A stretch of 64,000 nt of DNA, taken from the NCBI GenBank assembly GCA_030704615.1, contig CM060733.1, positions 9,300,001 to 9,364,000 of the forward strand. The letters run 5' to 3'. The notes beneath the pieces are model-generated. The model saw nothing but the letters and a program-made list of their open reading frames with translations, was not told where the DNA came from and searched no databases. The position numbers were made by a program, and so were the translations under genes. Shown here piece after piece: positions 7,785 to 34,411 of this stretch (position 1 is its first letter; every line of letters begins with the position of its first letter). This stretch comes from Takakia lepidozioides. Its lineage: Eukaryota > Plantae > Bryophyta.

Positions 7785-7787
<3 letters not shown>
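6351..7787 (-). mobile_element. LINE ORF2 fragment (APE endonuclease to start of RT)
   Basis: VYMP..VVLLGDFNARVG..N.NGRRL..TR..SIVDYII..SDHFLVW (endonuclease); WWTNEIK..KKFW..KAGGPDGIVNELIK (pre-RT). Disrupted. Confidence 0.92.
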
Positions 7788-7831
<44 letters not shown>

Positions 7832-9535: not shown

Positions 9536-9654
9536 TAGGTCTGACTGACAGGGTCTTCTTGCATAGGCCTTTGGGCTTTGCTTACCCACTAGGTTTGCCA
9601 TCCCTAGTAGTATGGTGGTATTGTTTCTCATGTTTATGTTGAGCAATGTGTGCA

Positions 9655-12600: not shown

Positions 12601-13589
12601 GCCCAACTACTTGTTCAATACTGCAGCCATGGGTAGTGGATCACAACAATCTGCAAAGGCATCCGAACCAGGGCTTCCTGCTGCCAGAGTTCCAACGACT
12701 TTGCCTCTCGATGCAACAACAAAGCATAATCAAAGAAAGGTGAGAGCAAAAGTTTCAATGCCTGGGCGCGTGGGTGGATTTGTATTGTTAATGCTACTTC
12801 ACAATGTGTGTCATTCGTGCTATTCTCATTTTTTGATCGTTGTGTCATTCAATATACAGATGGTGAAACCAGTGAAGCGTTCAATGGACAGGGAGAGTAC
12901 AATATGTGCTATCAATCAGACTACAACCACAGTGGATCTAACTGAACCACAGGGTGACCAACAAAATCCGCACAGTGTAAGTACTTCCTTTGTGCAATTT
13001 TGTTTCCTTGTCTGATGCTGGATCAATACACCCCCTATGTATCGCCACATAGCTGCAGGCCCAACAACCTACAAAGGTAGTTTTGTGACATCGTCCTACC
13101 ACATCCATGTTGACCATGCATAACCTGCTACCAACTAGGTATGGCACCGTTCCAGCTTTGATCATGTCAGCATGTAGTATAGAGACAAGCAAATGCAATT
13201 CGGAATTGGAAGTACTACAATAGGTAGGGTTGGGGTGTTTGCTGGAAGAACTTCAATGTCATTTTGCAGGAGTGCCAAGCTGTCAGTCTCTGTTCCCAGG
13301 GTTCATTTCTGATATAGGAATCTGGTTTTTGTTGCAGTTTCAGATCGGCGACAAGGTGTTATTGTTTGATCCTTGTGCACCAAAAAGAAGGGCAGGTGTG
13401 GGATATATTACTGGATTTCCGAAAGCAAATGTGCCAGACAACTATTACCGTATCCATGTGAAATCGGTCATGATTTCAGAGGTTGTGTTGCCGTACCCGG
13501 ACTACTCTGTTACCCCTAATTATACCACATTGGGTGACACGCAGGGAAGTTCCACCTTATGGTCTGAAAAGTTTCTTAAACACGCGTGA
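9655..13589 (+). CDS. CACTA accessory (TnpA-like) multi-exon gene with an inserted FCP1/NIF-like HAD domain; possibly pseudogenised
   Basis: In order: Pro/Tyr-rich N-terminus; Ptta/En-Spm-like block GNPEGP..W..LV..W..SRSGRTG..ETGRTPS (10540-11270); coiled coil (11490-11630); HAD domain ILILDLNGLL..RPGCQEFL..VGVWSS..NTLLVDDSP..NP (12065-12560); C-terminal IGDKVLL..YYRIHV..LPYP..TLGDTQGSSTLW (13339-13589). Exon boundaries are not fully resolved. Confidence 0.75.
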
Positions 13590-14487: not shown

Positions 14488-15293
14488 TGCATGTCAATCC
14501 AAAACAAAGAAAAAAACTAGCGCAAATGTGAAGGGAGAAGACATTTCAATAACCATAATGGTTATGGTTATGGCTATGGTTATGGTATGAATAGATTTGG
14601 AAAGAAAATGGCGTTATATAACAACTTTGGGAAGCGTCTAGATCTCATGGGAGAAAGTGGATCTGAAGAAAACATGAGAGAGGATAAAAAGTCAGACCAC
14701 CAAATAAAAACTATGAGAAACAAAATTTGCTTAAAAATTGAACAACGGAAAAGGACATGTGAAATTCCATAAACCAGGGCCAAAGATGAGAAGTATGAAA
14801 ATGAAATAAAATGAAAATTTGATGCAGAAAAGTCGTAGAGCTTAGAGGGAAAATGGAGGAAAACATCATAGAAAAAACTTGAGGACTGGCAAATTGAAGA
14901 ACTGTATGTCAACAACGATTGAGTAAGGCTCCTCCTAGTGGGAGACTTCAGTGGGAGAATTGGTTATGTGAAAAGCAAGTCCAATGTTTCAGAGAAGGAC
15001 TGGAAATGGGGCTATTTTCTTCCGTTGTTAAAAACCTCTTTGACAGAATTTGAAGACTCAAGTGGTCGTGCCCGCCCATTTTGTTCTTGTGATCCATATG
15101 TTATGTAGGCGAAACTCCCCCACAAGGTCATCTTTGTTGACCAGGACGTACAGCAGGCCAGCATCCAGCAAACCAGAAACAAAGGACGAGAACGTCCACT
15201 GGACATTCGAGGTTCAGTGCGACATAAGAAGATAAGAAAAAAGATCCCCCAACGCAAACAAGAAGGGCCATATAGAGAAGAAAAATTTATTTC

Positions 15294-18200
15294 TTAAATC
15301 GAAGTACTGGAGTTGAGCTCAACAATATGTCTTTGGTCTGGAACTCGCTCGCACGACTTGTTTTCTGATTGACGATTAGCCTCCTCCAAATTAGCGCGCG
15401 CCTTCACTGCTTCGGCGGCAGTAATTATCTTAGTGCTATTCCTTGTCGTATTTTTTCGTGGAGGCATTGTTCACGTGGATCCATTGAGAAGGATCTGACA
15501 AGTTATACTCCCAAAGTTTTGACCAACAGTCCCTGTACCTTTCCAAGTCTGTTGGGTTACCACCTTTTCTCGGTCTCCACCACTCCACCTTCACCTTCTT
15601 AAAATTAGGATCCTCCCTTTCGCGGATCACGTCAGATATTGCCACCCCCATCCGGGCCGGGCACGTACTTGGGTCATAAGGGCGAACGAGCACAAAAAAA
15701 CCCTTTCTCAATATCCTTGAACGGATTCAGGGATATTCTTGGTCGCTCACACCTCGGGCCACAGTAAGGTTCTAGGATTTCATCCTCTTCTTCCACATCT
15801 GGCAATATATGTGGATGGATTCCATCTCTGTGATGATTCTTGGACCAATTTGTTTTCGGCCAGAATCCCTCAAGAAGCTGAATACGGTCGGGAGCTTCTG
15901 GAATTGGCTTATCCAGCTCGGCAAGAATGTTTCCCCAGTACTGGTCGTATTGTTCCATTCGACCTCTGTAATGATCGTCAAACATCATTCCTTTCGTCCA
16001 AAAATCCCTGTATTTTTTTATTCCATTCTTAATGAATGACTGTTTTTCGGAGGAGTCGTCCCTGACTCCCTAGATAGGTCTCCTTGGAATGGCATCTGGG
16101 TCTCCTTCAGGGAGCTTCGGAGTCCCGTCAGGATTGGACTTCCTCATCTTCACGCTATTGTTTGTTGGAAGCCAATCCGAATCAGTAGCGGACTTCTTGT
16201 ACTTCATGACGGGCTAGTCCTCCGCATCCTTAAAAAAACGGAAGACGTGCATCTCCGAAATCCCAACCAACGCCTCCTTTCCATCCAGAATACAGCCCTT
16301 GACAAAATTCTTGAAGTCGGGAACTTCCTGAATAATCTGTGGAATGAACTGCAGATCTTGCGAGGTCATAAAAGACCTCATCAAATCCGAAAGAATGTAG
16401 GTGCTTCGTTCCTTCAGCTTCTTCGAAAGGTAGCTGAGAACCCGTCGATGTCCTCATGGGTGTGTCCGACCATTAGGAACCCTAGCTGGATTTCTTCAAA
16501 AACATCTTTGGCGGTCAGGAGGGATAGAAAAGCAAGCATCCATCTGTTCTTATTGTCCTTCGCAGAGTTGTCCATTTGCAAGTACAGTCTTCTCGGAAGT
16601 GGATGAGCACCACGTTTGTCTTCCGGCCTGCAGGGTTTAAGAGCATCCAAACATCTCGATTTACCTCTTAAAAGTAATTCGAAGAACTCGTTTTGAAGTT
16701 GGTAATCGAAATTGTTCCTGGACTCGCGACAGGTTGGCTTCTCTAGCTGGCGCAGACAACGTGCCAAAGAACCAATTGTAAAGTTTGAATTTCCCTTCCA
16801 GAAACTCAAGAGAATATTGTCCGTAAGCTCCATCACCGTGTCCGTGCGTGACCATTCCCGTTAGTGAAACTGGAAGCTGACCCAATCCAAAAATCATCTT
16901 ATTTGGAGTCTGTAGCCTTGGAACAGCTGTTTTCCTATGATCCATTTTGTCGTGAATAATACAGAGAAACTCCTCCGGAATCATAACAAACTCATTCCTC
17001 CAGCTATGGTACAGTCTTCTGCACGACTCTTGGTGCCTCAAATGTTTATCAAACGCTCGTTTGTGTGTCACCTGTTCCGCACTTCTCTTGACAGACTTTC
17101 TGATCAGGTCCTTGAACATCTCATACTCCGTGCACTTCGCAAATGTACTCCCAATTTTACGAACCTCCACATTAGGAAATATCCAACTCCGGATGCGGCT
17201 AACAGCCGACTGCGAGACTCATTCCAACCCGAAAAATTTGTTGGTCTGTTACAAAAAGGCAGGGTCAGGAAAGGAACGTCCACTGGACAATGGAGGTTCA
17301 TGAAGCTAGAACCACAGTCGAAAGAGACAAAATCGAAGGGAGGATCATCCACATTGAATCAGAAAAATCTTCCAGGAAAGAAATTGAAGAATGGAGATTT
17401 CATACATCGTTGGACTCGTCTCGTATTCGCTTCCAGTTCATTTCAGGTGGTAAGACTCTCAAAGTATCCCTCCTTCCCTCCCCAATGCATCTTGTCTTAT
17501 GGGGCATGAGGTCAGTATTTCCGTTGACAATGTACATAATGTTACCCTCTGCCTGAAGCGTCCTTGGGCGTGGCCTCTTCACTCCACGGTTCCCATGGAG
17601 ACTTGACAACCAACCCTATTTACTCAACTTTTTGTACTCCATGTATGTGGACCTGCCAATTCCATGAATTGTCCACCAAGCAGTCTCACATACATCCACA
17701 CCCTCAATCGTAACGTATGCCCTGCGAGAGGTCCCTTCCACCATGTGAAGTCGTTTCGAAACATTCAGTTCGTGTTCTCTCCTCTCATCCAAAGTGGATC
17801 CCCAAAAAGAAGTACGGATAGCCAAGGTTTTTCGCCAATCGAAATATTGACAGCAGTGAAGTCTGCAGCAAGGTTTGCTGCTCACGGACCGGACTTCCTC
17901 CAGAGTAAGATTCTTCATTCTATTTTTGGAGTGTTCCAAATCTCGATCCCTCTTCTTTCTCGTAAAATGCCGATACGCCGCTTTCTTCACACCTGCCTCG
18001 TGATCTTCGTACAAGATACTGTCAGAGGATCTAATAAAATTCTCTAGATCATTTGAGAGTAGTTTCCCACTTTTCAAAAGTCGTGTTTTTGTTAAAGGCC
18101 ATTTTACAAGAGACATCAAAGATCCAGAACCTCTAGAAAGTATTCTGGTGACAAGAACTCCAACATCGACCTCTCCCAGTTTGTCATTGAGGATCACCTC

Positions 18201-18701
18201 GTCCGGAATGCAGGCTTGAATCCTCCCCTCGAATAGTGCACCCCCATCATCATCCAACAGTACGCACTGCAAGTTTCTCCAGTTGTTTCTTCCGAGTCCT
18301 CGAACTCTTCGATGGTCTGTGGTTTGATTCATCCTCGTCGTCGTCAGAATTCTCGGCAGTATCTCTTGTCTCCAGCATAAAATCAGGATTCATGTCAGGC
18401 CCTCCTTGATACTAGTTATTCTCCGCAAGAACTTCGCCAACATTCCACATCACCGGGGTCCCAATGGCCTCCTTCAAGGTGTCAGCATCCATATGTCCAT
18501 AAGGAAGAGACATAATGAGTGTGCTTCATCACATGAGATGAGAACTACTGAAATGGTTGAGGAAGATAATTGTTGTTCATGACAGGTCCCAACCCCGGAG
18601 ACATTAAGGCAGTCCCCAGTGGCTACTGGAGATGAGGACCCGGGAAGAGTAAGAAACACACTTTGACCCGTCTCTAAAATCATGATCACCGGAACCTCCA
18701 C
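15294..18701 (-). pseudogene. Sola-like (DUF7869-type) DDD transposase, frameshifted
   Basis: KPCCRLHCCQ..VCETAWWTIHGIG..LHGNRG..DLMPH..LPP [intron ~17246-17404] ..FAKCT..H..HQ..IIHDKMD..RRLYLQMDNSAKDNKNRWMLAFL..FLMVGHTHEDIDG.FS; C-terminal beta-rich domain VLVRP..VKVEWWRP. Confidence 0.8.
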
Positions 18702-21122
18702 TGCACAAGCGAGGAAACTGGAAACCCCTCCGTGACGACCTTACTGACAGTAATAAGCAGTATGAGTGAAGACTATATTCAGAGATGAATCAATTCAATA
18801 AAAGGAAATACACTCGCGTATGAACGTTTCAGAGAAGTAGAATAGAAATGGAATTGTTGTTTGGTCTGGAACATTTCATTTGAAGATTGTGTCTAATTAT
18901 ATAACCTCCACTGTACAATGGAGGTTAGATGAGATACAGATGAAAAAGTCGGACGGATGAATATTAGTGGATGAACATGGTTACGTGGATGAATAATTGT
19001 AATGACGGATGGATGTGAGCATTGACGCGACTGTCCAGTGGAGGTCCACGACTTCAGGTATAACGAAATACAGAAATCGGAGAGAATTGGACTGTAATTT
19101 CTAAACATGCAGATGACAAATAAGTAGATTTTCCTGTAGAGTATAGAAAATATATAGATGTCTTAACATTTTCTACGGGTGAAAATGCAGTTCACACGAG
19201 AGATTATGGAAATTCAGAGAGTTACACCTACGATGGCCGCAGAGGTACTGGATGCCCAGAGAGGTGCAGTATGGGAAGCGAGGTGGGAGATGACCAGAGA
19301 GGTGCGGGAAACACAATCTGCAAGTGATTGGTATGGAGATAGAAGTTTGAACAGTTTGCACTCAGACCTTATATAGAGGTGGAAACCAGGTTGCCCGCTG
19401 GAACTCCTCCAATGGGATAGTGCGATACATTGTCTCCCGGATCGATTTCTGTCGCCGTTGATATCCGGTATGGCCACAATCGAACGGTTCTAGATGGTGT
19501 AGGAGTGCACTCTTTGACCGATTTCGGAAAAGAGTGTCATTTACTGGTAGATCCCTATGTAACAATTATGATGCCAGAAAGATAACGGCTGATAACGGTG
19601 GTTCAATGGTCTCGCACTCGTGCTTATAAAGCAGTACGTATTTCGCATTCAATGTTGTCCAAGTGGCTGATGGCCTGACGCCGATGACAATGTGCAGCTA
19701 TGACACTCGGCCGAGAATGCGGCAGGCGTAAATGAGTGACAGAGGAAATATTCCAAGCCTTAATCCGCCGAATGTAGACATGGTCAGGAGCAATTATTCC
19801 CAGTGGCAAAACGCCGCAAGAGGATCTGACTTGTACATTTCATTTATCGTCACGTGGGGGGTGTGGGAAATATCCCACGGGGTTATAATTGATGATCCTG
19901 TGCAAGGAATCATTAATGTCATATTTTCTCGTTCATTCATCTGTTTTTTCATTTCATCTAGTCATTCGTAAAATGGATGGATAGAATGGAAAGGATGAAT
20001 TGGATGATATTTGCATGGATGTTGGATGGAACACGCGCGACCGTTCGATTTCGAAAGGACGCGATGGTTCAGATCCTTTGCGACGGCACCATATAAGGGG
20101 TGTGGTCGTTCAGCCCACCCTTTCGCCACTCCATTGTGTACGCGGAAGCACTGCGGAAGTGGTAAGACCGAGTAGCGCTAGAAAAGAGAGTTTTGAAGAG
20201 CGGAGAGCGTGAAGAGTAGAGATTGTGTTGTGCATGGTGCCGTGAGAGCTGAGAGAAGAGAGCGTGTAGTTCAGTGCAGCGTGAGAGTGCAGTGGAGGAA
20301 AGGAAGCAGACAGCGGATTCAAGTGCAGACAGGAGACGGGAAGGAAGCAGAGCGTAAAGGAGAGCGGAGCGGAGCGGTGGAAGCTTAAGGGTCAGGCGTT
20401 TCAGGTTAGCAACAGGGGCACCGAAATGGCTCACGCATCTAGCAGGTAATGTTCTCGTTTACGCATGTGGTTTGATGTCATTCTCTCTTGCTTGCTTGTC
20501 ATTCTCTCATTCTCTCTTTGTTCTGTTTGTTGATTTGATTTTCTTTTTGTTTTGCTGTTGTTTTTGTTGGTCAGCATTGCCCACGTCGCTGTTGGTTTGC
20601 TTCTCTTCCTCACTCGCTTTCGTTCCAAAGGTTATAGAGCACCATTTGATTCTTGCATGTCATGTTTCGTGAGTGTGCTGTCTTGTCTGATGCGGAGCAT
20701 CTCTTTTCAATTCATGTGGTTCCAAAGCTGTTTCAATTAGTTTGAATTGATTAAAGTTGTTTAGGTGTTTCAATGCATTGTTGCTTCTCTGCTGGTGGTT
20801 GGTATGGGTGGTTTGTGGTCCTGGTTTACTGGTGCTGCTGGATTATTAGGGTTATGGATTAGGGTTATGGCGGGTTAGGATCATGGTTTTTAGTGATTGT
20901 TTTTCCGAATTTCCGATATTTGATAACGGGTTTTTCTTCAGGGCTAGGCAACTCTAGTAGACTAGTCTCCGTAGACCACTAGACCTCTACTAGACCTCCA
21001 TAAACTCCGACAGGACAAACCACACGAACCTCGCCTGCCCAGTGGAGATTCCTGCGTGTTACTATGCCAAGGCACAACATAAGGATGTATTGAGATAGAC
21101 TTATGTAGGTTCCTCCCCTGCG

Positions 21123-21712
21123 TTGATTTTTTGTTCTGTCAGTATAAAAAGAACGGACGTAGGAGTGCACACGGTGGCCAAAGATGGTTCTGAGACCATC
21201 GTCGACATCTGTAAGAGGCCAAGGAGACAGAATCCAGTAAGCATCAACGAAGCAGAAAACCAAGATGAATCACTGGTTGTATCGAAAACAAAAACCTTCA
21301 AGAAGAGATCTGAGAATCAAATATCAGATGTGGGATTTGACGTGCGAACCTTCATAAATCCGGGCACTAACGAACAATGTTCGAGGGAGTTATTCGACGG
21401 GAGACAACGGAGGAAACAGAGGAAGATAAAGATGAAAGTGATGACTGTAATCTTCAGTCTGATTCAGATAATGACATTTCTGTAGGAGATAGTGAACAGT
21501 ACCCGGGATCCGTCCTTCCGTCCTCTCCAGGATACAGTCCTCACTCTCCTCAGTATGCAGTCCTTGTAAATTCTCCAGAATATATCCCTGCAGATTCTCC
21601 TCAGTACGTCCCTGGAGATTCTCCAAAATACATCTCTGGAGATTCTTCGACATATACACCTAGAGAGTACTCCCCTGAAACCTTGAGGATGATTCGAGAG
21701 AGCCTCCTGTAG
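21123..21712 (+). CDS. Transposon cargo ORF(s): acidic tract plus SPxY repeats (Pol II CTD-like)
   Basis: EETEEDKDESDD..SSPGYSPHSPQYAVLVNSPEYIPADSPQYVPGDSPKYISGDSSTYTPREYSPE. Two overlapping frames (21123-21485 and 21377-21712) suggest a frameshift. Confidence 0.55.
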
Positions 21713-22129
21713 TTATTGTAGATACAAGAAAATGAAAAGATGAAACTCATCTTACAAAAGAATATCGATTTCTTGTAGAAATTATATATTCGTTATAGGA
21801 ACAATTTTGAGACCGGATGATGTATGGAATGGCGAGACAAGCCTTCTCTGAATAAATGTATTATTCTTCTTATAAGTGAAATCGTTTTCTCCTCCTGAAT
21901 TGAACTTTTTTATCTGTCAGCTATGAGCGTATGAATTGTTGAACCTCCACTGGACAGTGGAGGTTACTGTCCTGGGAATCTTGTATGGTTGTCATGATAT
22001 GTGTCTGAGGACCGAGGTGGTTTGTTCTGTGGACAACAACATTACCCTGAGGGATTGTATTGTTGGAATGTGCAAACTTACATGCTTGTTAGGTCGATAT
22101 CATTTCTGACCTTATTCAATTCTGTCGCA

Positions 22130-25100
22130 GGAACTTGTGCAAGATGTAAATGACGACAATCTTAAGAAGTACTACACTGACTGGCCCTCAAAGATTATAT
22201 GGTCAAAGGATCTGATGAGGCTCGTGAAGCTATCTAAGCTCCTAAACGACCCGAATAAGGCGCATAGATTTGACACAACATTTCTCGAGAAAGTTGCACA
22301 TGCCCGTAATTTCTTCGAGCTGAGGGGGAGGCCGAAAAAGTACAACGATCACACAACGAAGGCGGAGACTAGACAATGGAAGGTAAATGATTCATTGTGT
22401 TTTCCGTTCCTTTTGCTAGAGAACCAAAATATTCTCAAGCTTGGATTTAATGTGACAAACGGAGACCGCATTACGAAGCAGGAGACAGTACAAAAATAGC
22501 TTCATAAGGGAGGGTGCTACAATGAACGAGCGGAATGGTTCAGCATTCGGAAATTTGACATGATGGGGTCTTTTGTAATGTGTCTTGTTTGGTAATGAGG
22601 TGCTTGTCCAGTTCTTATTTTCCCAATCTATTTATGTTCTCCACCTGTAACAGTTCCGCAAAAATACTTGAAACATCATATGCTCATGAAAACGTGATGT
22701 TGCGGAGAACGCTTCCAAAACTTTTCATGCTCATTGGGTTTTTCAAGGATTTTCTAGGTACACTCTTGGAACTGTTCCTGGTGGAGAACATGAACAGATT
22801 GGACAAATTTGACTTGGAGGAGCACCGCATTCCGAAGCAGGAGACACTACAGAAAGAGCTTCAAATTACAATGCACAACAAGATGGACGGAGATGAATTC
22901 ACAATCGAATCATCACTTGGTGTATAGTATAATTGACAAGATAATTGTGACTATTGTTTCATCTCAAGATTAATATCAAATATTGAATGAAATTTCTAAC
23001 TTTGGCCCTGATATTTTTTGTAGGAATTTATGCAAGCATGTCAACTCATACTGGAGATGAGTAGCGTGAAGGAGGCCATGGTTCTGGTTCTCTGTGACGA
23101 AGACGTATGGAACCTGTGGGAGGAGGTTTTCAAACAGTGGGAACAAGGGAAGCTTATTGATATTTTCGGGATTCAGTGCAAGGGTGAACAGCTACCGCTG
23201 AATAAAACCGCTATCGCGAAACTGCAAGGACTTAATAGCAGGCAGTTGAAAAGAGTGGCGGAGAAAATCCTGAACAGAGACATTTGCATTCGGGGAATGA
23301 AATTCAAGGGCGCGGACAAATCCAGAAACACAATGAGCGCGTATATTGACCAAATGAAATTGCGACGGTTTATTATCGACGATGTAATAGAAGTCTTAGG
23401 GTGGTCTCGGAGGAGCAAACAGAACCCGGAACCGTATACCAAACAGGAGTGGCGTGATGTTAAAAAAAAATACAACTTCAACAAAGCTGAGTTTGAAACA
23501 TTTCGAGATAGGCTTGGGAACGACTACATTGTTAGCAAACAGAAGATGAATATGGAGACGCAGCCAATGACTGCTGTCTTCAAGAAGTATGTCTTGTCGT
23601 GCAAGTAGACCTTCGAGGATAACCAGAATGCCCTGGCGATTCTACGCACGAGCTTCAGGTCCCATTACACACAGCTCGGGGGGAACCAGAAATTTGCTGA
23701 CGCCGGATCACGGTTGGGACTTGCACCAAAGATTTGGTTCGACGACATATCCATGGTGTTCGTCAATACAGTTTGTGATGATGACTCTGTTGTCTTCGAG
23801 ACAAAGGACTACTCAAATATCTTGGATGCTTTTGTGGCTCGGCAGCTCATGTCCAGTGCTTTTGTGTTTTTCTCCACACAAGAATCATCGGGAAATCTTG
23901 TGTCATACATCCGGAATGGCCCTGGATCAAAATCGTTTATTATCCGACAGGGTTATTACATTCCCGACGAGTTTGAATCATCTTACAAGAGCTGCACGAC
24001 TATATTCTCCCGGACGGTCCTCTGCCTCGACTATGTATTTCCGGCAACAGCTGAGGAGATGGTGAATCCGGATGACCACATTCAAACTGTTTTGTTATCG
24101 CCGGACCCAATTAATCCCGTTATCCAAGGACCAGATGTAGACCCGACCTCGCAGGAGATGGAGTGCAAGACTTACAATCATGAGCTGAGGCCGGACACCT
24201 ACGATCACCTGGTTTTTTTTTTTTTGCAGGGACGGGATGTCTTGTGTGAACATTTTCGGAGGACTGGCAATGACATACGTTATGCCTGTAAGCGGATTCT
24301 GCATCTTGGAATTGTCTGTGTTTTCAGTTTTCCGGATTTAACTCTCGTATTATTGACGTTGTCGGAAAAGCGTGTTTAACCTGTGTCTGATTGTTCCATT
24401 TTCTTAACCTCCACTGGGCAGTGGAGGTTCATGTTATTGGAGTTGTGGGTGTTTTGGGTGTTTGTTATTCTGCAGATTGGTGTGTTTGGTAGTTGTCTCA
24501 AAAGAAAGCCTAACCCTTTCAATCTATCGATGGTTGGTGTTCGTCGGATTTATTTTGATATCATTGTTTGGTTTCATTGCAGGAAAGAAATATTTGTGTG
24601 CTCGACATAAACTTTGTAACAAAAAAGAAATTTTGTAGAAGCAAGGTGGAGGCCTATTTCAGGACCCTCCAGATTGACAATCATACTATCGCAGGAGACG
24701 GAGATGACGGAGACTCACTGCAGGATGACGAAGTGGACGAAGAAGATGATGACGAAGGACACGACAAGGATCAGGACGAGGAAATGGAGGAGAAACAAGA
24801 AGAGGAGGAGGAGGAGAAAGACGAAGATGAGAACATGGAAATCGTCAACGGAGTCCAGGGGGCAGATGCGGCTAATGTTGGAAAGGGAAAGAGAGGGCCA
24901 GGAAATTTCACGGTTGGATAATCTAGGTAGTACTCCAAATACCCAAGAACGCGTTGCGCCACAAGATGTACACAATCTGGACAGCTCTTCCTCCAGTTCC
25001 GATAACACCACAAATAAGAATCCAGCTTCTCCAGGCGGACAAGAAGCGACATCGACGGAGTTAGTTGAAACCCTCGGTCAAGGGTTCACACATGTGGAAG

Positions 25101-28100
25101 GTGACGAGCCATTGATTATGTCACCGGACCCCGTTAACAATCGTCGTGAGCTGGTGTCCCAGAATGTCACCCAGGATCTGGTTCTGGATGTAGGTAACAA
25201 CTGACAATTAGTGAAAGTTTATTCGTACATACTTCTGAATACAATATGACAATATTGTAACTATACATACTTGTGAGTGGAATAATCCAAATGTTATTTC
25301 CATATGACAATATTGTAATTATATATAATCCCAATGTATTTCCCATATCCGTCTTTCTGGACTTCCGAATAAAACATATTTTCACCCGGATACATATTTC
25401 CGTTCGCACACCTTTGTGGACAGCCACTAACCGATTTGAATAACTTTTCTTGTAGATCCAAGAATCCAATTCGAAGGAAATGACACACACAAGAAAAAGA
25501 TCAAAGGACACTCAAACGGTGAAGAGACACGTTGATCTGACAGTGAGGGCCAGGTCACTTGAGCCGGTTCCGCAAGTAACCTCCACTATCCAGTCGACGT
25601 TGCCATCAAGGGATGCAGGGATTGAGTCGGAGAATCCTCCTACTCGCGTGGAACGAGAAGAGACAGAGCACCACAATCACGTAACAACATATCCCGATTC
25701 AGGTAAAACATTGGTTTTTTTCTTATTACTCTTATTATTGGTCTTTCAGTCTAATCTTCGGTATTGCTCAATTCGATAATTTTGTCAGATCATTTTGGAC
25801 CACCATAGTCGTCATCCGTGGGATTTTTCATTAATTTCCTGTAGATTCGTGAGACGACGTCTGAGGAGATCAAACACACGAGGACCGACTCTATCGACAC
25901 TAAGACGGAGAAGAGAAGAATGGATCGAACAATTACTGTCGCTCTATCTGAGCCGGTCATACAAATTACCTCCACTGGACAGTCGAGGTTGCCATCTGGC
26001 TCCACAGAGAAGGACGATAACATTTGACCTAGAGATGGGAAAGAGGAGGAGCAGCCTCCCCAGGGATCTCAGCAGCCCACTCCAAAAACGGTAATGATTT
26101 CAACTCCATTCTTCCGTTTGTCTACTTTGGGATTTTACTCAAATTGAAATTAATAATGAACTTTTATGTTATTCCACAGGACAACATGCATTACCCTCCA
26201 ATCGACTATTCCCTTTCTGTCAATCCAAACGATGTGCACTCCCTTCCTTGGGGACCGAACGGATGCCGGCCAAGATACTACGTCCTGGTTCTGGACATCG
26301 GTTACCTTTGTGAGGTTTTCCTAAAGGATGGAAAGAAAACACCTCCTGCCACCTAGCCTTGTATCTCCGCAGGGAAATTCAAGTTAGGTACGCGAAACGG
26401 TCTTGACGAATTCGTTAAGTGGGCCGTCAAAAAGTTTTCCGTTTGTTTTTGGAACATTGGACCTGAAATAAACGTCGAGACTATCGCCAAGGCCGTGTTC
26501 AGGAAGTACTATTCCCAGGTCAGAACTTACAGCAGTGAGAATTCCGTCATGCATAGATCGACATTCAACGAAAAATGGCCCAAAGCTCCCAAAAATCCCA
26601 TCTACTTTAAACGTCTTCACGACATTTTTGCTGAGGAAGACCCGACGGCTTACAAATCCAATACTCTCCTCATCGACACTGTAGACAATATGTACAAGTC
26701 CTATTTGAACCCGTTAGGACATACCATCTTCCTTCCAAAATATAAGGCGCGCGTGGACCCTGACAAAGATAAATTTCTACTGGAAGAGCTCAAGCCTCAC
26801 CTTAACATGTTCCGGTTATCGGGGATGGATGTCATGCCGTTCAACGACCTACATCCTTTCGACGTTTCGAAGGATTTCTTCGAGGACGACCCAACGGTTA
26901 AATTTCTTAGAGACTTTGATTATAGGTGGCAGAAGTTTCTTAGCAATCTCGAGTTGCGCCGCTGCATTGGGACATAAAATATTTTAACTGAGTTTGGTGA
27001 ACCTCGGCTGTCCAGTGGACGTTCTTGTTCACTTTCATGGTGTCGGTTTTTCCAATGCATTGTATTGTTCCCTTTTATCATCCTAAGTATGAATGACTCT
27101 CTGGCAGATTGGAGCACCTGTTTCTCCTCCTGTGCAAGGGTTGCGTTTGATTATTTTTGATGTGAATGGAGTCTTGTGCAAAATCTTGAAACACCAAAAT
27201 AGCTACAATGTCCCCCGGTTTTCAGAATCGGACTACAGAATTCCAGCTCTTGTCGGATTCCGACTTGTCTTTAGACGGGAGAAATATCGCGAAGTGTGGA
27301 CAGAGTTGCACAAACACTACCGGTTAGGGATTTGGAGCTCTATGATGTACAAGAACTTGCAGCCCATCCTGGATTTTTTGCTTCGTGGTCTACCTCAACC
27401 GGCCTTCGTTATGTCTCAAGAGGATTGTATTTCATGCCCTACTTCGGTTCACCCTCAATTCAAATTAGGATTGGACCCTCCTCATTTGTTTTTGAAGCCA
27501 CTGGTCAAGGTCTGGCAGAGATTTGGTGGGCAATACACCAAGAGTAACACTTTGCTCATTGACGACACCGCCATGAAGTGTGTATTGAACCCGCCTCATG
27601 TCTTGTTCTCAAACCGTTCCAGACCGTTGAGACTGATGGTTGCTATCTTCTTAAGGTTCTTCAGACCTATTTGCTTGGAATGAGGAAATATCCTACTGTT
27701 TCAAGCTATCTTAGGAAGAAAATGATAGGGTTGAGTCTTTTTCCCAATGTTTCAAACGATCCCAAGTTTAGCCCACTCTGGGATTTTATTGAGGACAACG
27801 GTTTTAAGAGTCTCAAATATGATGCCTCAAAATAAATTATTTTTGATCAATCCCATCTCACTCGAGCTATTGAATATCCTCATGGTTTCTCTTTTTCATT
27901 TCCTTGTAATCACACACGTGAAAGATATGGTACTCTCATTTTAACTCATTTTCAGTTGAATTCTTGACGCATATTCCGGGCAATCCCAAGACTCTGATAT
28001 AGACCTTCATACGGGGACAAAACTATATCTAGTGACCTCCACTGTTCAGTGGAGGTTCGCATTCGTGCATTCCCGGATTTATGATTATGTCTCTTTGGCA

Positions 28101-30460
28101 GGTTCAAGGAGATGCTGACAACGTCATCGGTTCCTCAAGTCCCCTAAAGGAACCCTCCGGATCAGCTGTGAGTCGGAGTATTGAAGGCTTTCCGAGGGTT
28201 CACGATGGTGCTCAAATTGAGGATGGATCCTCTGTCAGACCCTTGTCCTCTCGGGAAGCAGACGATACTCTTCTCCTCTCGGGTCTTCCTGGGGGTAAAG
28301 TCCAAGGTCCAGGTGAAGAACACAAATATCCCGGAGACTTTATCGACCTTTCCGAACATTCCTCACCCTCCCTGTTCAGTACGCAGGGTCTGGTCTATCC
28401 AACCGTCGGGGACTCAGCTACGGCTCCGCTGCACCTGCTTCCGTCTCTTCCTCGCATATCTCCCCAGCACGAGGGTTGGATAGCCCAAATCCGCAAGAGT
28501 CAGGTGACTTAAACTCATTTCTCACTCCTTGCTCATTTTCCTAGTTTCACTTAGTTTGGGGTCTGATATTCATCTGTAGCTCCAGGTAAGAAAATCTGCA
28601 GATTATGACCTTCCTGTCAAACGACGTCTGCATTGGAATGTAGTTCCGAGGTAAATTATTCTTTCGTTGCGTTTTCATTCCATCCAGGATGTCGAGTGCT
28701 CAAGGGACAATTTTATGTGCTTGCCTGTTGTTGCCCCTCCACTTCTCCCCTCGTTCAATGACAACACATCTCCAACATCGACACAGCGTGACCCTGAACT
28801 GCTCGCACAATGTTCTGCACCAAAGAGGCGAAAAACACCCCCCGAACCATTTCTTTCCTCTGCAGGGAATCATTCCAAAAGACAAAAGGCTGACAAGAAA
28901 AAAAGAGCGGACTCCAAACACATGAGGACTCCCTCGGATGTTGTGGCGCCTCGTCAATCCAAGCCCGCGGGAATCCACTGTTCTTCTGCAAGACATTCCA
29001 ATAAGGCTTCAATGGTACATTTCAAAACAATTTCTCTACTTTCGTTTGCAGTTTTTTTTTTTTTTTTTTTTTTTTTTGTAATTTCTATACAAGCGAGTAT
29101 GGAGCCGCATAACTTCTTGAATGCGCCTCCCGACAAGGTGCGTCCACTAACCTCCACTTGACAGCCGACGTTCATCTTTTCGTGATCTCGAACTCTTCGA
29201 TATATGGTCTACTCTTGGTCCTTTACAGTAGTCCATTGTCGGGATACTTATGTGTCCGAAAACGTAGAGGTCACTCTGAAACTAAGGAACACTACATTGT
29301 GTTGTTTCTGATGGCGGGAACACTTAAATTGCGCAGGTTGGTATCGTCCATCAACCTTCATTTGCAACATCAAGGAAACGGATGCTGTTAATATTGAGTG
29401 TCAACGGTCTCCTTTGCTACCGGCCACCTCCAACCGGCGGTGAATTGTTTAAGGAGAGATTTCGTTTCAGGAAAGTTACAGTTCATGTTCCCGAAAGACC
29501 TTTTGTGGTTCCCCGGCCGGAGTCTTGGAGTTTCTCAACCTTGTGTTCATGCATTTTCACGTGGCGATCTGGTCATGTGTTGAAAGACATGTTCTTTGTA
29601 GGATGTTCGAGTGTTTAGTTCCTACGAAAATTGCGAAGAAATTTTGCTTCATCTGGTCAGCTGAGGATTGCAAAGACACTACCGGTTATATCATGCCTGG
29701 GATGAAATATCTCGTTAAGGATATTCGCACTGTTCTTGCCAAGTACCCTGGTACACCCTTTGCAACGCAGGGACAAATACTCATTGTTGATGATGAGCTA
29801 TCAAAGGGCCTCCGAAACCCACCAAATATTGGATTCTTCCTTATTTCATACAAGCCATCATCAAAGAGATTGGTTGACCAGGATGATATGACAAAAGCTG
29901 TGTGGCCATATATATTGAAAATGGCTGCAGCTTCAACAGTTGTAGATTACATCAGCGAGAACCCTGCCAAGTGTTCTCGTAAGCCTATTGGTCGTGACCA
30001 TGCCTATTGGGCTTGGTATGGAAGATATGTTGATCCTCGTGTTTGGATCCCACAACAAAAAGAACCTGATTACCTTGGTATGTACTTATCTCACTGTTTG
30101 TTGTTTATGGAGAATTTGATCTTGAAAGTGTCTTCTACTTGCACTTTTACTTTATCATTTTTTCTACAAATGTTCCACATTTCAGCTGACATTTGTCATA
30201 TGAAAAATTGTTTTGCCCAGTCACATTCAAGGAGCGAATTCGAAAAGAAGAATAAGAGCTTTGTGATTGGCAAGAATGGCGGGCTTCCCGGCAGGCTTCA
30301 AGGGCATCAAGAGATTCAACAAGTAGAGTTCCAAGTAACATTTCGGATGATAATGTTACTACTAGGTTCGAGTTCTCTGAAAGTATTTCCGTTTCATCTG
30401 GTGCGGAGACCGTTGCAAGTGGTTGTGGTAACCGGAGGCGTCTTCGAACACATGCCTTGA
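22130..30460 (+). pseudogene. Large multi-exon transposon cargo gene: helical region, MTase-like segment, D/E tract, three FCP1/NIF-like HAD domains
   Basis: A series of + ORFs is bounded by plausible GT/AG sites. HAD1 ~26270-26900: VLVLDIGYL..RNGLDEFV..FSVCFW..NTLLID. HAD2 ~27140-27830: LIIFDVNGVL..LGIWSS..NTLLIDDT..NP. HAD3 ~29380-30080: LLILSVNGLL..RP..EFL..VAIWS..LIVDDE..NP. There are in-frame stops and frameshifts. Confidence 0.75.
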
Positions 30461-31006
30461 CTGCGAGCCGTTTGGGAGGAGGCTCTGTAATATTAATGGG
30501 TTAGCGTAAGCCGTTGTATGGCTTCGAGCCGCTGGATAACATTAAGTCCAACGGATGTACAGTTGACGTTACATTAGGTCTGACTGCAACGCCAAAGTTG
30601 CAATCTCTAATAAAATATGAATGTTTATCATCAATGTATGCAGACACATTCTTCCATATCATCCTCTTCATCACATGCCATGATTGTTCTATGTTTGGTT
30701 TTGTATGTCATCTGATATGACAACCATTTTCTGCAAAAAGTTTTACATATCTGACCTCACATCATTGTGTAATTTATTGCATCCTCCCATTTTTTTCGTG
30801 AACGTCAACTTGGCAGTGGATGTTCTTCTAAAACCACAATACATACTTATATTGTCTCCAAAAAATGTTTGGAGGATTATATTGTGTATAAAATAACCAA
30901 AATAATCATATATATCGCTTCATTTCAATAATAAATTTTTGTTTATTCATATTTCTCATATTATTTCTGGACCAAACAAAAGTCCAGAATTAGTTAAAAT
31001 AGTGTT

Positions 31007-32686
31007 AATTGTGTAGTCAACCAAAGTTATGGCCATTAGTTGCTCACCGACGCTTTAACTGTGGCAATAACTGTTGCAATTCCAGCGAGAGATTGCAAAG
31101 ATGATGATTGAAGACAGGTTTGTCGAAGCCCCACAAACTAATGAGTTTAACAGTGAGTTGGTTAATTTAGTGTTGGAATGAAAAAAGAAGTGATTGCAGG
31201 TGTTTTGTCACATTTCTTGGCTTTCATGCATAAGTATGACAAGTTAAAAGCCCATACTATGCTTGTTTTGATGCTTGATCTTTGCTTCAAAAATATGGCT
31301 TTGGTATGAAATCTTTACATCTTTTGTTTTTCACATGTTTCCAAGCTTTGGTACCATCTAACCCCTTGGATAGTGATTATGGTCGAGTACATGGCAACAT
31401 TCATGATTTATTCAAGACCTCCGAAACAACGGCTGAAACCACCAAAGACATTGTCAGCCGAGAGTTGTCTTTGTTTCGATCGTATTTGCAATTGATCGAG
31501 AGAATTGCACTAATCCCTTGACCTGGTGGAGGTCTCATGAACTACAGTTTTCAACTATTGGTCATCTGGCTCGCCAGATATTGGACATTGTTGGTAGCCA
31601 AATTGAGACAGAACGAATATTTTCTATTGCTGGAATCCTCACTGCATTACGTCGTTATCGTTTGCAAATAAACAATCTTGACAAAATGATCTTTGATGCC
31701 AAAAATTGGCCTAATGATCTGAGAGAGGGTTGCTAGAGTTTCAAAGCGTTGGCTGATATGAAGGAGTTTGAGGAGGAAAAGCAGCTTGACAAGGAATTTG
31801 CATATGATAAAATTGAATGTGGGGAATTTCCAAAGGGTGATGAGACTTTCTAGTGTTGTGCTAACATGGTAAAATAAATTTCACTTCTTCTTACCTTTAC
31901 ACTGTTATTTAGCAATCCATCCATTTATATCAAAGTCATATGTGTTGATTGGGTCTTCTACTGGTTTGTCTTTACAGTACTTTGAAGCGACAAGAAAGGC
32001 TCTACAATGACAATCCATGCCATGGGATTATAGTAGCTGCCTAAAGTGTGTAGGGTATACAAAAATCAGTGCATTTGAAGGTATTGATGTATGTGTGTAT
32101 CATTGTATGGGTTCAACGGTCTGAAAATATAGACAACAAAATTTTGTGATGGTTGTAATTGTGTGAATGTTGTAGTATTTCTTGAGATCATTGATTAGTA
32201 CCCTACATAATGCGAAAATTTATATGAAACCAATATGTTAACTAAGATGTCCATTATTGATCATGTGGACGACCCAATTTCAAGGGCTAACCATCTCGCA
32301 TGGTTGGTCAATTCATGTTTGGCATTTATTTTTACTTTTAAAATTATTTATTTATCTTTTCATCATTTTAATGTGCAAATTTTTATTTTATAAATAGTTC
32401 ATATACATGACTGCAATATTACCGCTTTCAAGGACCGCCAATTTTACCGGTTGTGAAGTATATTGAACTTCCATAACCGGTTCAAGAAACCGTCCTTGCA
32501 AAGGTCTTTAATAACCGGAATTAGACTTAATGGGGTTTTTTGAAACTATCAAAGAATTGCCTTCGGTAGGTTATTTAATTTTTTATTTTGTCCATGTAAC
32601 CGCCTCCGGAGGATCTAAGGAAGGGCCAATGAGCAAAGAACGTGCACCCTAGGAGCTCACAAAAATCTGATAACCGCCCAACACTG
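31007..32686 (+). mobile_element. hAT element, 3' part: transposase C-terminus/dimerisation domain and right terminus
   Basis: The frame resumes NCVVNQSYGH*LLTDAL..MLDL..WWRSHELQFSTIGHLARQILDIVGSQIETERIFSIAG (31518-31736). AACCG subterminal repeats lie at 32420-32680, and the end ...AACCGCCCAACACTG (reverse complement CAGTGTTGGGCGGTT) is at 32686. Confidence 0.85.
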
Positions 32687-33491
32687 GTGATGATGAGCTC
32701 AGATCCTGTTACCATTAGGTAGAGGAATTTGACGGCACCGGTCCAGGTAAAATTCTCTTCACATCAAAAGCCTGGAACCGTCCCCATTTCATGTTTAAGA
32801 AAAAAACCGATTTTGGGTTTTCATATGCCATGCAATATAGAACATTAACAAGAAAAAAAAATCAAGACAACAAAAAATACGAAAAGAGGGATTCCAGGCA
32901 TAAGCTTTGAATGTCTTACACTTGTCACTGTCATTGCTCGTTGAAGCTTGCACACCAAGCGTGTTGGAAGGTTGGATATTTATTTTGACTATCTTCGGAG
33001 GCGTCTTGGAAGGCTGGTTACTTGTTCTGACTAGGGACTTCTTTGTGGACAACCAACCATCATCAAAATCTAATGAGCATTGCTCTCGCCCTAGGAAGAT
33101 CCACAATGATCATTTTCAGTGCATTTTTTCAAGTTCTTTCTTTTTTCCAGGAACCTTTTATTTTGGTTTAAAATGTTGTTCGGGCACCCGGGCGATTATG
33201 TGGAACGAGAAAAGTCCGGCTCCTGTTCCAGTCTGGTTCTTCAACATTGAGGATGTTCCCGTTCTAGTATTTGCTGGAAAAAGTTATCAGGTCCAGTTTA
33301 GGTTCCAATTACATAAATATATTATTAGAAAAATATATTTAAAAAATAGATTATTCATTTCCCTGGAATTTAGAAAGTGAAGTTCTATTGCTCAACTGAG
33401 TATTAATAGATCTAGTCAATAGTCAGCATTTAGTGCCACCCAAATAAGTATCGGTTCAAATCCTACTACCATTGGGTGTCAAGGTATGATC

Positions 33492-34411
33492 CAGTGTTGT
33501 GCGGATAGATGATTTATCCGGATTTACCCGGTGGATAAATCAGGATAAGGGTAAATGATTTACCCGAGTTGGCCCATTTCATGTACCCTTACACTTACCC
33601 TTCGGATGGGTAAATAATTTGAGATACCCTTACCCTTACCCATCTGAAGGATAAATAATTTCCATATACCCTTTACCCGTAGGTAAATATAAATTTTTGG
33701 AGGGTAAATAGCAAAAGGATCAATAAAAAATTCTTCTTCATCCAAGGGCCTTCACTCAAGGGTCCTTGTACAAGCATCCTCCCTCTATCACCATCTCCAA
33801 GGGTGTACCATTATTGTGCACGCGTACCATTGTACCATTGTCCTCCATACCATATAAGGGCTTCATCTCTATGAAAAGCTTTGGGTTTGTGTCAAGAGTC
33901 ACTTTGCTTAGAGTGCACGGGCGGGCATTTTCCAATGGTCTCAACTCAACTTGGATCTAGGAGGCACTAGTTTCGTGGTCGAGGCACTCGAACATGGTCT
34001 TATTGAGCTTTGTTTGATTATTATCTTTGGTGTGAAGAAACACGCTCATGATCATCCCTCATATTATTCACAACATATGATACAATCAGCCTTGTACTAA
34101 ACCAAAAAATAAACCAAAAATTGATTACCTTAATTAACTAGTTATATTTTTTGAGTTGAGCATAACAAATATATATATATATCCTACAATATATCCTTTA
34201 TTTATCCGGCGGGTATAGAAAGGGTAAATCATTTATCCCTAGCCGCTATTTATCCTTACCGGGTCAAAAATATTGGCCTTTACCCTCTACCCGTAGGATA
34301 AATAAATGGACATATAAATAATTTACCCTTACCCGGAGGATAAATAATCCTCTGATTCTATTTACCCTTACCCGGGGGATAAGCAAAAATATATTTACGT
34401 GCACAACAATG
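33492..34411. mobile_element. Non-autonomous hAT element (920 bp)
   Basis: TIRs CAGTGTTGTGC / GCACAACAATG (10/11 match), a perfect 8-bp TSD GTATGATC (33484-33491 and 34412-34419), and dense TACCC/GGATAAAT subterminal repeats. Confidence 0.93.

What the first reader, a model, noticed from the sequence alone, without database searches (positions are those of the whole stretch)
15191..30824. 24-bp palindrome scattered ~14 times through the element: candidate binding site of a self-encoded (anti-silencing) factor
Seen: AACCTCCACTG-NN-CAGTGGAGGTT at 15191, 17275, 18693, 18903, 19023, 21027, 21942, 24406, 25578, 25967, 27000, 28034, 29149 and 30801, spaced ~0.1-2.5 kb apart. The arms are conserved, the 2-nt spacer varies (GA, TA, GG, TT, TC, CC, CA) and the flanks are unrelated. 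Most copies are in introns or spacers (including the transposase intron); two are in probable exons, read as TST(I/G)QS. By eye it is absent from the nested CACTA/LINE inserts and from 31-64 kb. Inference: fixed spacing with a free centre fits an operator for a dimeric protein rather than a MITE. The analogy is Arabidopsis VANDAL elements, whose VANC proteins bind dispersed internal motifs to remove silencing.
Basis: partly seen in the sequence, partly recalled or inferred. Interest (0 to 1): 0.92.

Follow-up and report, generated by a model that had tools for sequence, protein, structure and literature searches.

The report
Family-specific palindromes inside a plant transposon
A 24-base palindrome is repeated 14 times in one degenerate DNA transposon, and related transposons each carry a different palindrome at matching places (upstream of the transposase gene, in one conserved intron, downstream), so these are most likely docking sites for the element's own transposase-type protein.

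Summary
All 14 copies of AACCTCCACTG-NN-CAGTGGAGGTT lie at the stated coordinates with 0-6 mismatches. There are none in the other 48 kb of the window and none expected by chance.

They are not a MITE. There are no target-site duplications and the flanks are unrelated. They are not a selected hairpin, because the two arms vary independently.

The element encodes a decayed putative DDE transposase (Pfam DUF7869) on the minus strand, 18389-15439. On the plus strand it carries cargo that includes three NIF/FCP1-like domains.

The key new result comes from five sister loci with 40-58% identical transposases. A blind search found that each has its own recurrent 18-24 bp palindrome, with none in controls. 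The layout is shared: a cluster or tandem array upstream of the transposase, at least one copy in an intron at a conserved position, and a copy downstream. Motif similarity tracks transposase relatedness.

The transposase is the only protein shared by these elements. It is therefore the best candidate binder, rather than a VANC-like cargo protein.

The sites resemble VANC, TnpA and AtMu1 transposase motif systems. Binding, and any anti-silencing role, are untested. I rate this a new variant of a known kind, interest about 0.6.

The parts
15191..15214 (.). Palindrome copy 1 (3 mismatches), about 225 bp downstream of the last transposase-homologous ORF
15439..18389 (-). Decayed putative DDE transposase gene (Pfam DUF7869). 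Homologous ORF pieces: 18389-17619, 17615-17403, 17218-16664, 16860-16417, 16453-16217, 16069-15677, 15726-15439. Frameshift near 16810.
17210..17405 (-). Putative phase-0 GT..AG intron of the transposase. Its position (about aa 580-586 of the intronless relative P0081) is shared with the sister loci.
17275..17298 (.). Palindrome copy 2 (2 mismatches), in the middle of the conserved intron
18693..18716 (.). Palindrome copy 3 (5 mismatches). First of three copies 304-634 bp upstream of the transposase ORF.
18903..18926 (.). Palindrome copy 4 (1 mismatch), upstream cluster
19023..19046 (.). Palindrome copy 5 (6 mismatches; right arm good, left arm decayed), upstream cluster
21027..21050 (.). Palindrome copy 6 (3 mismatches), 49 bp before ORF 21099-21482
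21942..21965 (.). Palindrome copy 7 (perfect), between ORFs 21371-21709 and 22110-22496
24406..24429 (.). Palindrome copy 8 (perfect), 30 bp after ORF 23609-24376
25578..25601 (.). Palindrome copy 9 (3 mismatches), inside ORF 25456-25776 (possible exon); unit A of an old internal duplication
25967..25990 (.). Palindrome copy 10 (2 mismatches), inside the paralogous unit B
27000..27023 (.). Palindrome copy 11 (3 mismatches), 26 bp after ORF 26357-26974 and 70 bp before the ATG of ORF 27093-27683
28034..28057 (.). Palindrome copy 12 (1 mismatch), at the very start of ORF 28036-28509
29149..29172 (.). Palindrome copy 13 (4 mismatches), straddling the end of ORF 28655-29158
30801..30824 (.). Palindrome copy 14 (4 mismatches), 344 bp after ORF 29453-30457
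26033..26974 (+). Cargo: NIF/FCP1-like domain 1, with an in-frame stop at 26354-26356
27093..27683 (+). Cargo: NIF/FCP1-like domain 2 (ATG-to-stop ORF of 196 aa)
29328..30460 (+). Cargo: NIF/FCP1-like domain 3
22110..24376 (+). Cargo ORFs of unknown function. 23024-23605 and 23609-24376 share a frame and are separated by one stop codon.

Best explanation
The palindromes are family-specific dyad-symmetric protein-binding sites that belong to a group of DNA transposons with a DUF7869-type (putative DDE) transposase. The most likely binder is a dimer of the element's own transposase or a shorter product of that gene, acting through its conserved N-terminal region (a CC-x3-CC cysteine motif followed by helices). 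The sites sit in the non-coding parts of the element: a cluster upstream of the transposase gene, one conserved intron, the 3' flank, and, in this window, the boundaries of the cargo ORFs. Bound there, the protein would recognise cognate copies and act as a cis-regulatory or self-recognition system (transposase recruitment, transcriptional control, possibly counter-silencing).

Shown here: the sites, their family specificity, their conserved placement, and their better conservation than the neighbouring spacers.

Inferred: who binds them and what binding does.
For: 1. Enrichment: 14 copies inside 15.6 kb and none in the other 48 kb; 0 expected.
2. Variation is position-specific. C to G at half-site positions 4 and 7 gives 14 of 37 changes, and transitions to transversions are 10:27. 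This is unlike neutral decay and typical of a degenerate recognition site.
3. Only full dyads occur; lone half-sites are not enriched.
4. The arms vary independently, with 79.9% of cells paired against 81.2% in shuffles, so duplex DNA rather than a hairpin is what is kept.
5. A blind palindrome-family finder gave one or two families in the window element, L003, L011, L012 and L013. It gave none in shuffles, in window 32-64 kb, or in L005 and L006. It also found none in L004, where a separate repeat search and pattern scan recovered a palindrome family.
6. The cross-matrix is clean. Each motif is confined to its own element, with cross-hits only between close variants.
7. The layout is conserved. 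There are upstream clusters or 48-, 53- and 60-bp tandem arrays. There is at least one copy in the intron at about aa 580 of the transposase in the window, L003-B, L013, L004, L011 and L012. There are also downstream copies.
8. Motif similarity follows transposase relatedness. L011 and L012 are 82% identical in the core and their 18-mers differ at one or two half-site positions. Families B, D, E and F share an ATCRRG start, while A and W differ.
9. In two copies of family B (85% identical), the upstream-cluster palindromes are 90% conserved against 64% for the spacers between them.
10. The only protein shared between the window and all sister loci is the transposase, and the 5.5-kb family-B unit holds only the transposase gene calls.
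11. Precedent: TE-encoded proteins, including a transposase alone, bind family-specific motif clusters and activate cognate copies.
Against: There are no binding data. The N-terminal model is confident (pLDDT 85) but has no significant PDB fold match, so a DNA-binding domain is not demonstrated.

The catalytic-core model only weakly resembles RNase-H-fold enzymes (PIWI, IstA, Tn5, Metnase; none with E at or below 0.001), so even 'transposase' is an inference.

Element termini, TIRs and TSDs were not found, so I cannot say whether the clusters are subterminal.

The window copy is decayed (a frameshift and in-frame stops), so its sites may no longer be used.

Over the whole 4.5-kb family-B alignment the palindromes are no better conserved than the rest (86% against 85%).

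Sister loci come from only two assemblies of unnamed organisms.
Confidence: 0.55

Rival explanations
1. One reading: a VANC-like accessory (cargo) protein encoded by this element, not the transposase, binds the palindromes and removes silencing.
For: The window element has several plus-strand ORFs of unknown function (22110-24376, 28036-29158) with no Pfam match. Nine of the 14 sites lie in the cargo half. VANC21 sites have a similar non-coding distribution.
Against: Sister elements with the same palindrome architecture share no protein with the window other than the transposase. The family-B unit holds only the transposase gene calls. No MULE transposase and no recognisable accessory domain was found. 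One cargo ORF is broken by an in-frame stop.
Confidence: 0.12
2. The palindromes are binding sites for a host factor (for example a dimeric transcription factor or chromatin protein) that the elements have acquired as promoter, enhancer or insulator modules.
For: Dyad symmetry and positions just upstream of ORFs, for example 70 bp before the ATG at 27093 and 49 bp before ORF 21099.
Against: Each transposon family has a different palindrome that tracks its transposase, and several families coexist in one assembly (ERZ25073694). One host factor cannot explain that. None of the motifs occurs in the flanking non-element DNA examined.
Confidence: 0.1
3. The palindromes mark module or cassette boundaries. 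They would be abutted end-like sequences or recombination sites at which the element gains, loses or rearranges segments such as the cargo ORF blocks.
For: In the cargo half the sites delimit ORF blocks of 0.9-2.6 kb. One family-B copy differs from the other by a deletion running exactly from one palindrome to the next. The tandem arrays vary in copy number.
Against: Blocks between sites are not repeated elsewhere in the window. Sites also lie inside an intron and in tight tandem arrays, which is not expected of cassette junctions. No recombinase is encoded. The one deletion is equally explained by ordinary unequal recombination between repeats.
Confidence: 0.08
4. The palindromes act as hairpins in RNA or as cruciforms in DNA, for example in 3'-end formation, processing or splicing control.
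For: Perfect copies fold to about -15 kcal/mol. Many sites lie near ORF ends.
Against: There is no compensatory change between the arms, and pairing is no better than shuffled. Only 4 of 14 copies fold below -10 kcal/mol and one does not fold at all. Upstream clusters and arrays lie outside the likely transcripts. There is no Rfam match.
Confidence: 0.05
5. A tiny independent mobile element (a mini-MITE made only of two terminal repeats) has inserted repeatedly.
For: Isolated copies have unrelated flanks, and how new isolated copies arise is unexplained.
Against: There are no target-site duplications. There are no copies outside the element in the window and essentially none in public metagenome or viral collections. 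The same relative positions are occupied by different palindromes in sister families.
Confidence: 0.03

Closest known systems
VANDAL21 / VANC21 anti-silencing system of Arabidopsis (Hosaka et al. 2017, PMC5735166)
   Same: A short motif is highly enriched in one transposon family and rare elsewhere. It is located in non-coding parts, namely upstream of the transposase gene and in introns. It often forms tandem arrays with rapid copy-number turnover. Related families carry different motifs (one search compared).
   Different: VANC sites are 9-nt, non-palindromic, and arrayed in one orientation at high density. Here the sites are 18-24 bp dyads, and in the window they are mostly single and 0.1-2.5 kb apart. 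VANDAL is a Mutator-like element with a separate VANC gene. Here the transposase is a DUF7869 protein and no accessory protein is shared among families. Loss of methylation is shown for VANC and untested here.
En/Spm (CACTA) TnpA-binding motif clusters, and the AtMu1c transposase acting as a sequence-specific activator (Sasaki et al. 2026 preprint, doi 10.64898/2026.08.24.746577)
   Same: Family-specific 8-10-nt motifs are clustered in cognate copies, and motif groups mirror transposon phylogeny. A transposase with no accessory protein can bind and activate cognate elements. This fits the inference here that the transposase is the binder.
   Different: Those motif clusters and their effects are confined to the element termini. 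Here the sites also occur in a conserved intron and across about 10 kb of cargo, and the termini are not identified. The site type is dyad-symmetric and the transposase group is different.
Subterminal transposase-binding repeats of TIR transposons in general (my own knowledge: Ac/Ds, En/Spm, P element, Mutator)
   Same: Multiple copies of a family-specific short motif near the transposase gene and on both sides of it. Tandem arrays occur in the sister loci.
   Different: No TIRs or TSDs were found. In family B the first and last sites lie about 500 bp inside the homology boundaries. Placement in an intron at a conserved position is not a usual feature.

Membership tests
VANDAL/VANC-type anti-silencing system | Mutator-like (MULE) transposase, VANA | tested here: not met
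   The only Pfam match on the transposase is DUF7869. No MULE domain appears even at E up to 10 on full-length relatives.
VANDAL/VANC-type anti-silencing system | A separate VANC-family accessory protein encoded by the element | tested here: inconclusive
   No Pfam domain on the unknown cargo ORFs, and no non-transposase protein is shared with sister elements. I made no direct comparison with VANC sequences because none was available by reference.
VANDAL/VANC-type anti-silencing system | Family-specific motif concentrated in non-coding regions of cognate copies | tested here: met
VANDAL/VANC-type anti-silencing system | Binding of the encoded protein causes sequence-specific loss of DNA methylation | not testable with these tools
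   This needs ChIP or EMSA plus methylomes.
Subterminal transposase-binding repeats of a TIR transposon | Terminal inverted repeats and target-site duplications that define the element ends | tested here: not met
   No TIR beyond the palindromes themselves in the window or in L003. The family-B homology boundaries show no TIR or TSD. Decay of these old copies may hide them.
Subterminal transposase-binding repeats of a TIR transposon | Motif copies clustered near both ends, on both sides of the transposase gene | tested here: inconclusive
   Clusters upstream and copies downstream of the gene occur in all families, but the ends are unknown and many window copies are far from either side.
Subterminal transposase-binding repeats of a TIR transposon | The element's transposase binds the motif | not testable with these tools
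   The N-terminal region model has no significant structural match.
MITE / miniature mobile palindrome | Target-site duplication flanking each copy | tested here: not met
   The flanks of all 14 copies were inspected and show no direct repeats.
MITE / miniature mobile palindrome | Copies dispersed in unrelated genomic contexts | tested here: not met
   None in 48 kb of flanking window sequence. One chance-level hit in JGI metagenomes and none in IMG/VR. The source genome itself was not available.
DDE (RNase-H-fold) cut-and-paste transposase | RNase-H-like catalytic fold with conserved acidic residues | tested here: inconclusive
   Invariant Asp residues in the HDKMD block and conserved DN..K.NKN and GHTHED blocks. 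The core model has pTM 0.74. Its best PDB matches are RNase-H-fold proteins (PIWI, IstA, Tn5, Metnase, PFV integrase), but none has E at or below 0.001. A profile search of PDB sequences was blank. The superfamily is not assigned.

The most novel reading that the evidence does not exclude
An uncharacterised group of plant-lineage DNA transposons (DUF7869 transposase) uses rapidly co-evolving dyad sites as element-wide address tags. The transposase-derived protein would bind them in promoters, in a conserved intron of its own gene, and at the boundaries of captured genes. It would thereby switch on or de-silence the whole element gene by gene, including captured NIF/FCP1-like pseudo-phosphatases. 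This would be an independent, transposase-based invention of a VANC-like system, with palindrome turnover setting family specificity.
Probability: 0.2. Interest if true: 0.8.

Novelty: new variant of a known kind. Interest (0 to 1): 0.6.

Why it matters
Sequence-specific self-recognition by transposon-encoded proteins is documented for a few Arabidopsis families (VANDAL/VANC, Spm/TnpA, AtMu1). This finding gives a sequence-level case in a different, unclassified transposase group, apparently from a plant lineage poorly represented in databases.

Three features make it experimentally tractable. The sites are long and dyad-symmetric. At least six diverged motif families can serve as natural specificity swaps. 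One intron site is positionally conserved.

It also suggests a simple computational signature for finding such systems elsewhere: recurrent element-private palindromes. If the transposase is the binder, that supports the idea that regulatory DNA binding is an intrinsic transposase property.

Tried and rejected
- Rfam scan of the window: nothing.
- TIR and TSD search around the outermost copies, and at the family-B homology boundaries: nothing convincing.
- Closer copies of the window's own family: none found. ORF 27093-27680 had no homologue at all. Exact-protein look-ups failed. The best transposase relatives are 58% identical or less and come from unnamed ENA, JGI or Logan records. Copy-to-copy conservation could therefore be measured only in sister family B.
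- Naming the superfamily: Pfam gives only DUF7869, the PDB profile search is blank, and two literature searches gave nothing.
- Fold search of the N-terminal region: no significant match.
- My first 9-mer based palindrome screen was too noisy. I replaced it with a stricter family finder that has shuffled controls.
- An early guess that the 17275 copy lies in coding sequence was wrong. Frame-by-frame translation shows it lies in an intron.
- The ACCGGATCC motif in L003 belongs to an unrelated nested element, not to the DUF7869 element.
- Intronless full-length relatives on short contigs (L007, L010) have no palindromes, but those contigs barely extend beyond the coding sequence.
Exons, and pieces on either side of in-frame stops, were searched separately by reference.
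Full report
**1. The observation**

Relaxing to 6 mismatches recovers the other four listed sites (18693, 19023, 29149, 30801) and nothing else in 64 kb. Two copies are perfect.

The 28 half-sites give the profile K-AAC-S-TC-S-ACTG. C to G at positions 4 and 7 accounts for 14 of 37 deviations, and transitions to transversions are 10:27. That does not look like neutral decay of a methylated repeat. It does look like tolerated positions in a recognition site.

The centre dinucleotide is free, though GA/TC is the commonest. No copy has flanking direct repeats. Lone half-sites are no denser inside the element than outside, so the unit is the whole dyad.

The degenerate pattern occurs once in the JGI metagenome collection, in a 69% GC contig and consistent with chance, and never in IMG/VR.

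**2. What surrounds it**

The minus strand from 18389 to 15439 carries a series of collinear ORF pieces. One hits Pfam DUF7869 at 6e-27. All of them align in order to 1100-1250 aa intronless relatives and to sister loci. A frameshift near 16810 shows that the copy is decayed.

I call this protein a putative DDE transposase for three reasons:
- It has conserved HDKMD, DN..K.NKN and GHTHED blocks.
- It has a multi-copy, multi-family, often decayed distribution.
- A core model (pTM 0.74) has nearest PDB folds that are RNase-H-type enzymes: PIWI, IstA, Tn5, Metnase and PFV integrase. None of these matches is significant.

The superfamily is unassigned.

The plus strand from about 21 to 30.5 kb carries cargo ORFs. 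These include three NIF/FCP1-like domains (26033-26974, 27093-27683, 29328-30460) and ORFs without any Pfam match. Two pairs of ORFs are separated only by an in-frame stop (23606-23608 and 26354-26356).

The host looks like a plant-lineage organism absent from named databases. The intact NIF ORF at 11717-13015 has its best named hits in land plants at about 35% identity, plus a 98% hit on a Logan contig from run SRR15431198. CACTA, LINE and hAT fragments lie nearby.

I searched exons, and pieces on either side of stops, one at a time by reference. I built and searched no joined model.

**3. Where the copies sit**

On the transposase side there are five copies:
- Three lie 304-634 bp upstream of the first ORF (18693, 18903, 19023).
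- One lies about 225 bp downstream of the last ORF (15191).
- One (17275) lies in the middle of a 196-nt GT..AG phase-0 intron, 17405-17210.

On the cargo side, ORFs of at least 100 aa cover 74% of the strand. Even so, five of the nine copies lie wholly outside those ORFs, two sit exactly on ORF edges and two lie inside. The binomial P is about 0.05 for five outside, and about 0.004 for seven not internal.

The two internal copies lie in an old duplicated unit. That unit is about 60% identical overall, and the palindrome with its immediate flanks is the best-conserved block.

**4. Hairpin or duplex site?**

Counting the eleven arm pairs over the 14 copies gives 79.9% paired cells against 81.2% in column shuffles, with one double change. 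Only four copies fold below -10 kcal/mol. Nothing maintains pairing, so the conserved object is the two half-sites on duplex DNA.

**5. Sister elements, the decisive comparison**

A search with the 185-aa exon 17218-16664 against 1.84 billion representatives gave 301 relatives, none above 58% identity. I fetched DNA around several of them.

I then ran a blind finder: palindromes with 8-nt arms and at most 1 mismatch, clustered by similarity, keeping families of at least 3. It reported:
- Exactly one family in window 13-32 kb.
- None in window 32-64 kb.
- None in any shuffle.
- None in the AT-rich fragments L005 and L006.
- One or two families in every locus that holds a DUF7869 gene with adequate flanks, apart from L004.

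Pattern scans extended these families:
- L003 element A has ATTATCCTCGA-N-TCGAGGATAAT, six copies.
- L003 element B and its paralogue L013 have GTATCGGCGG-N-CCGCCGATAC, 9 and 13 or more copies.
- L013 also has a neighbouring region with the variant GTATCGTCG-NNN-CGACGATAC, 12 copies.
- L004 has TATCGGGA-GATY-TCCCGATA. The blind finder missed this family; a repeat search and pattern scan found it.
- L011 has CATCGGGAGATCTCCCGATG, 12 copies.
- L012 has ATCRRGGGATCCCYYGAT, about 20 copies.

The cross-matrix of seven motifs against sixteen regions is clean. Each motif is confined to its own element, with cross-hits only between close variants.

**6. Shared architecture**

In every family the palindromes cluster upstream of the transposase gene:
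- Window: 3 copies.
- L003-A: 3-4 copies.
- Family B: 3-4 copies plus 2 more.
- L011: two 48-bp triplet arrays plus 3 more copies.
- L012: a 53-bp array of about 12 copies directly before the second gene.

One or more copies lie downstream of the gene.

Most telling is the intron that interrupts the coding sequence at about residue 580-586 of P0081. It is present in the window, L003-B, L013, L004, L011 and L012, and in each case it holds that family's own palindrome, with 1, 1, 1, 3, 2 and 1 copies respectively. The position is conserved while the sequence is replaced. That argues for function and against chance or independent insertion.

**7. Co-variation and constraint**

Transposase core identity is 82% between L011 and L012, and their 18-mers differ at only one or two half-site positions. 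Family B is 69-71% identical to these two and L004 is 61-64%, and all four share an ATCRRG half-site start. L003-A (47-57%) and the window family have different half-sites.

The two family-B copies are 85% identical over 4.5 kb. In the fast-evolving upstream cluster the palindromes are 90% identical (57 of 63) while the spacers between them are 64% identical (153 of 239). Over the upstream 1.3 kb the difference is significant (Fisher P = 0.04). Over the whole alignment there is no difference. One copy has lost exactly the stretch between two neighbouring palindromes, so the repeats also recombine.

**8. Who binds?**

The window's cargo has no homologue in any sister locus. The only shared protein is the transposase. 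The family-B unit defined by copy comparison is 5.5 kb and holds only the transposase gene calls.

So the simplest candidate is the transposase, or a shorter product of its gene. Its N-terminal region has a conserved basic stretch, a CC-x3-CC motif and a helical module. That region models confidently (pLDDT 85) but has no significant PDB match, so a DNA-binding fold is not demonstrated.

**9. Comparison with known systems**

VANC21 binds YAGTATTAY. That motif is enriched only in VANDAL21, lies in introns and upstream of the transposase gene, and evolves through tandem-repeat turnover (PMC5735166).

A 2026 preprint reports two related findings. Spm TnpA proteins bind family-specific motif clusters whose grouping mirrors Spm phylogeny. 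The AtMu1c transposase, with no accessory protein, also binds and activates cognate copies.

The present case works like these in distribution, specificity and co-divergence. It is not a member of either family. The transposase is neither MULE nor CACTA. The sites are long dyads rather than short oriented repeats. They extend through about 10 kb of cargo and a conserved intron. No TIRs or TSDs could be defined.

**10. Verdict**

The specific 'cargo-encoded anti-silencing factor' is not supported over the simpler transposase-binding reading, and any effect on silencing is untested.

I rate this a new variant of a known kind, with interest about 0.6. It is limited by the absence of binding or chromatin data, by the decayed state of this copy, and by the lack of the source genome for a genome-wide test.

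Noticed in passing
window 9536-13120 (and 8491-8520): A Logan contig from run SRR15431198 (L001, 3630 nt) is 97.4% identical and collinear. It joins 8520 directly to 9536 with no GT..AG, so the window has a 1015-bp insertion relative to it, or the contig has a deletion. The region carries an intact 432-aa NIF/FCP1-like ORF (11717-13015) and a Pro/Gln-rich ORF (9650-11009). It has no palindromes, so it is a separate repeated unit or an allele.
   Followed up: partly
window 11717-13015, 26033-26974, 27093-27683, 29328-30460: All four NIF/FCP1-like domains lack the second Asp of the DxDxT phosphatase motif (they read DLNG, DIGY, DVNG, SVNG). They may be pseudo-phosphatases like the TIM50-like plant proteins they hit. 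Three of the four sit in the palindrome-bearing element.
   Followed up: no
window 2751-4102: A tandem array with about 125-130-bp periodicity, giving open reading frames on both strands.
   Followed up: no
window 5134-5685, 7148-7894; repeats 6143-8931 vs 42705-44933: A CACTA transposase fragment (Transposase_21) and a LINE endonuclease fragment. Parts of this region are repeated at 42.7-44.9 kb at 79-95% identity, including a 40-nt inverted pair (8892-8931 and 44894-44933).
   Followed up: no
window 31437-31733: A hAT C-terminal dimerisation domain fragment lies just beyond the last palindrome.
   Followed up: no
window 22571-22854 and 22465-22504 / 22824-22863: An 87-nt inverted repeat (77% complementary, 110-nt loop) and a 40-nt direct repeat lie inside the cargo region, between ORFs 22110-22496 and 22559-22924.
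   Followed up: no
L003 11988-15628 and 15819-19674: Unrelated nested insertions, about 73% identical to L011 17110-20612, carry their own short recurrent palindromic motif (ACCGGATCCGGT and halves, about 10 sites). Element-private palindromes may therefore not be limited to DUF7869 elements.
   Followed up: partly
L013 13481-19552: Twelve copies of a variant palindrome (GTATCGTCG-NNN-CGACGATAC) lie in a 6-kb stretch next to the family-B element. The stretch has ORFs of 246 and 377 aa without Pfam matches and no recognisable transposase.
   Followed up: partly
L003 8043-8161 vs L013 8144-8180: One family-B copy lacks exactly the segment between two adjacent palindromes. This looks like unequal recombination between the repeats.
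   Followed up: yes
L004 1-5200: A Ty3-type LTR retrotransposon (LTR-like repeats at about 7-56 and 5113-5162) sits immediately upstream of, or inside, the N-terminal part of the DUF7869 gene. This hides any upstream palindrome cluster there.
   Followed up: no
window 33315-33700: Short tandem repeats occur here (a 41-nt unit rich in TACCC), along with clustered GGGTAAAT-like words at 33.5-34.4 kb.
   Followed up: no
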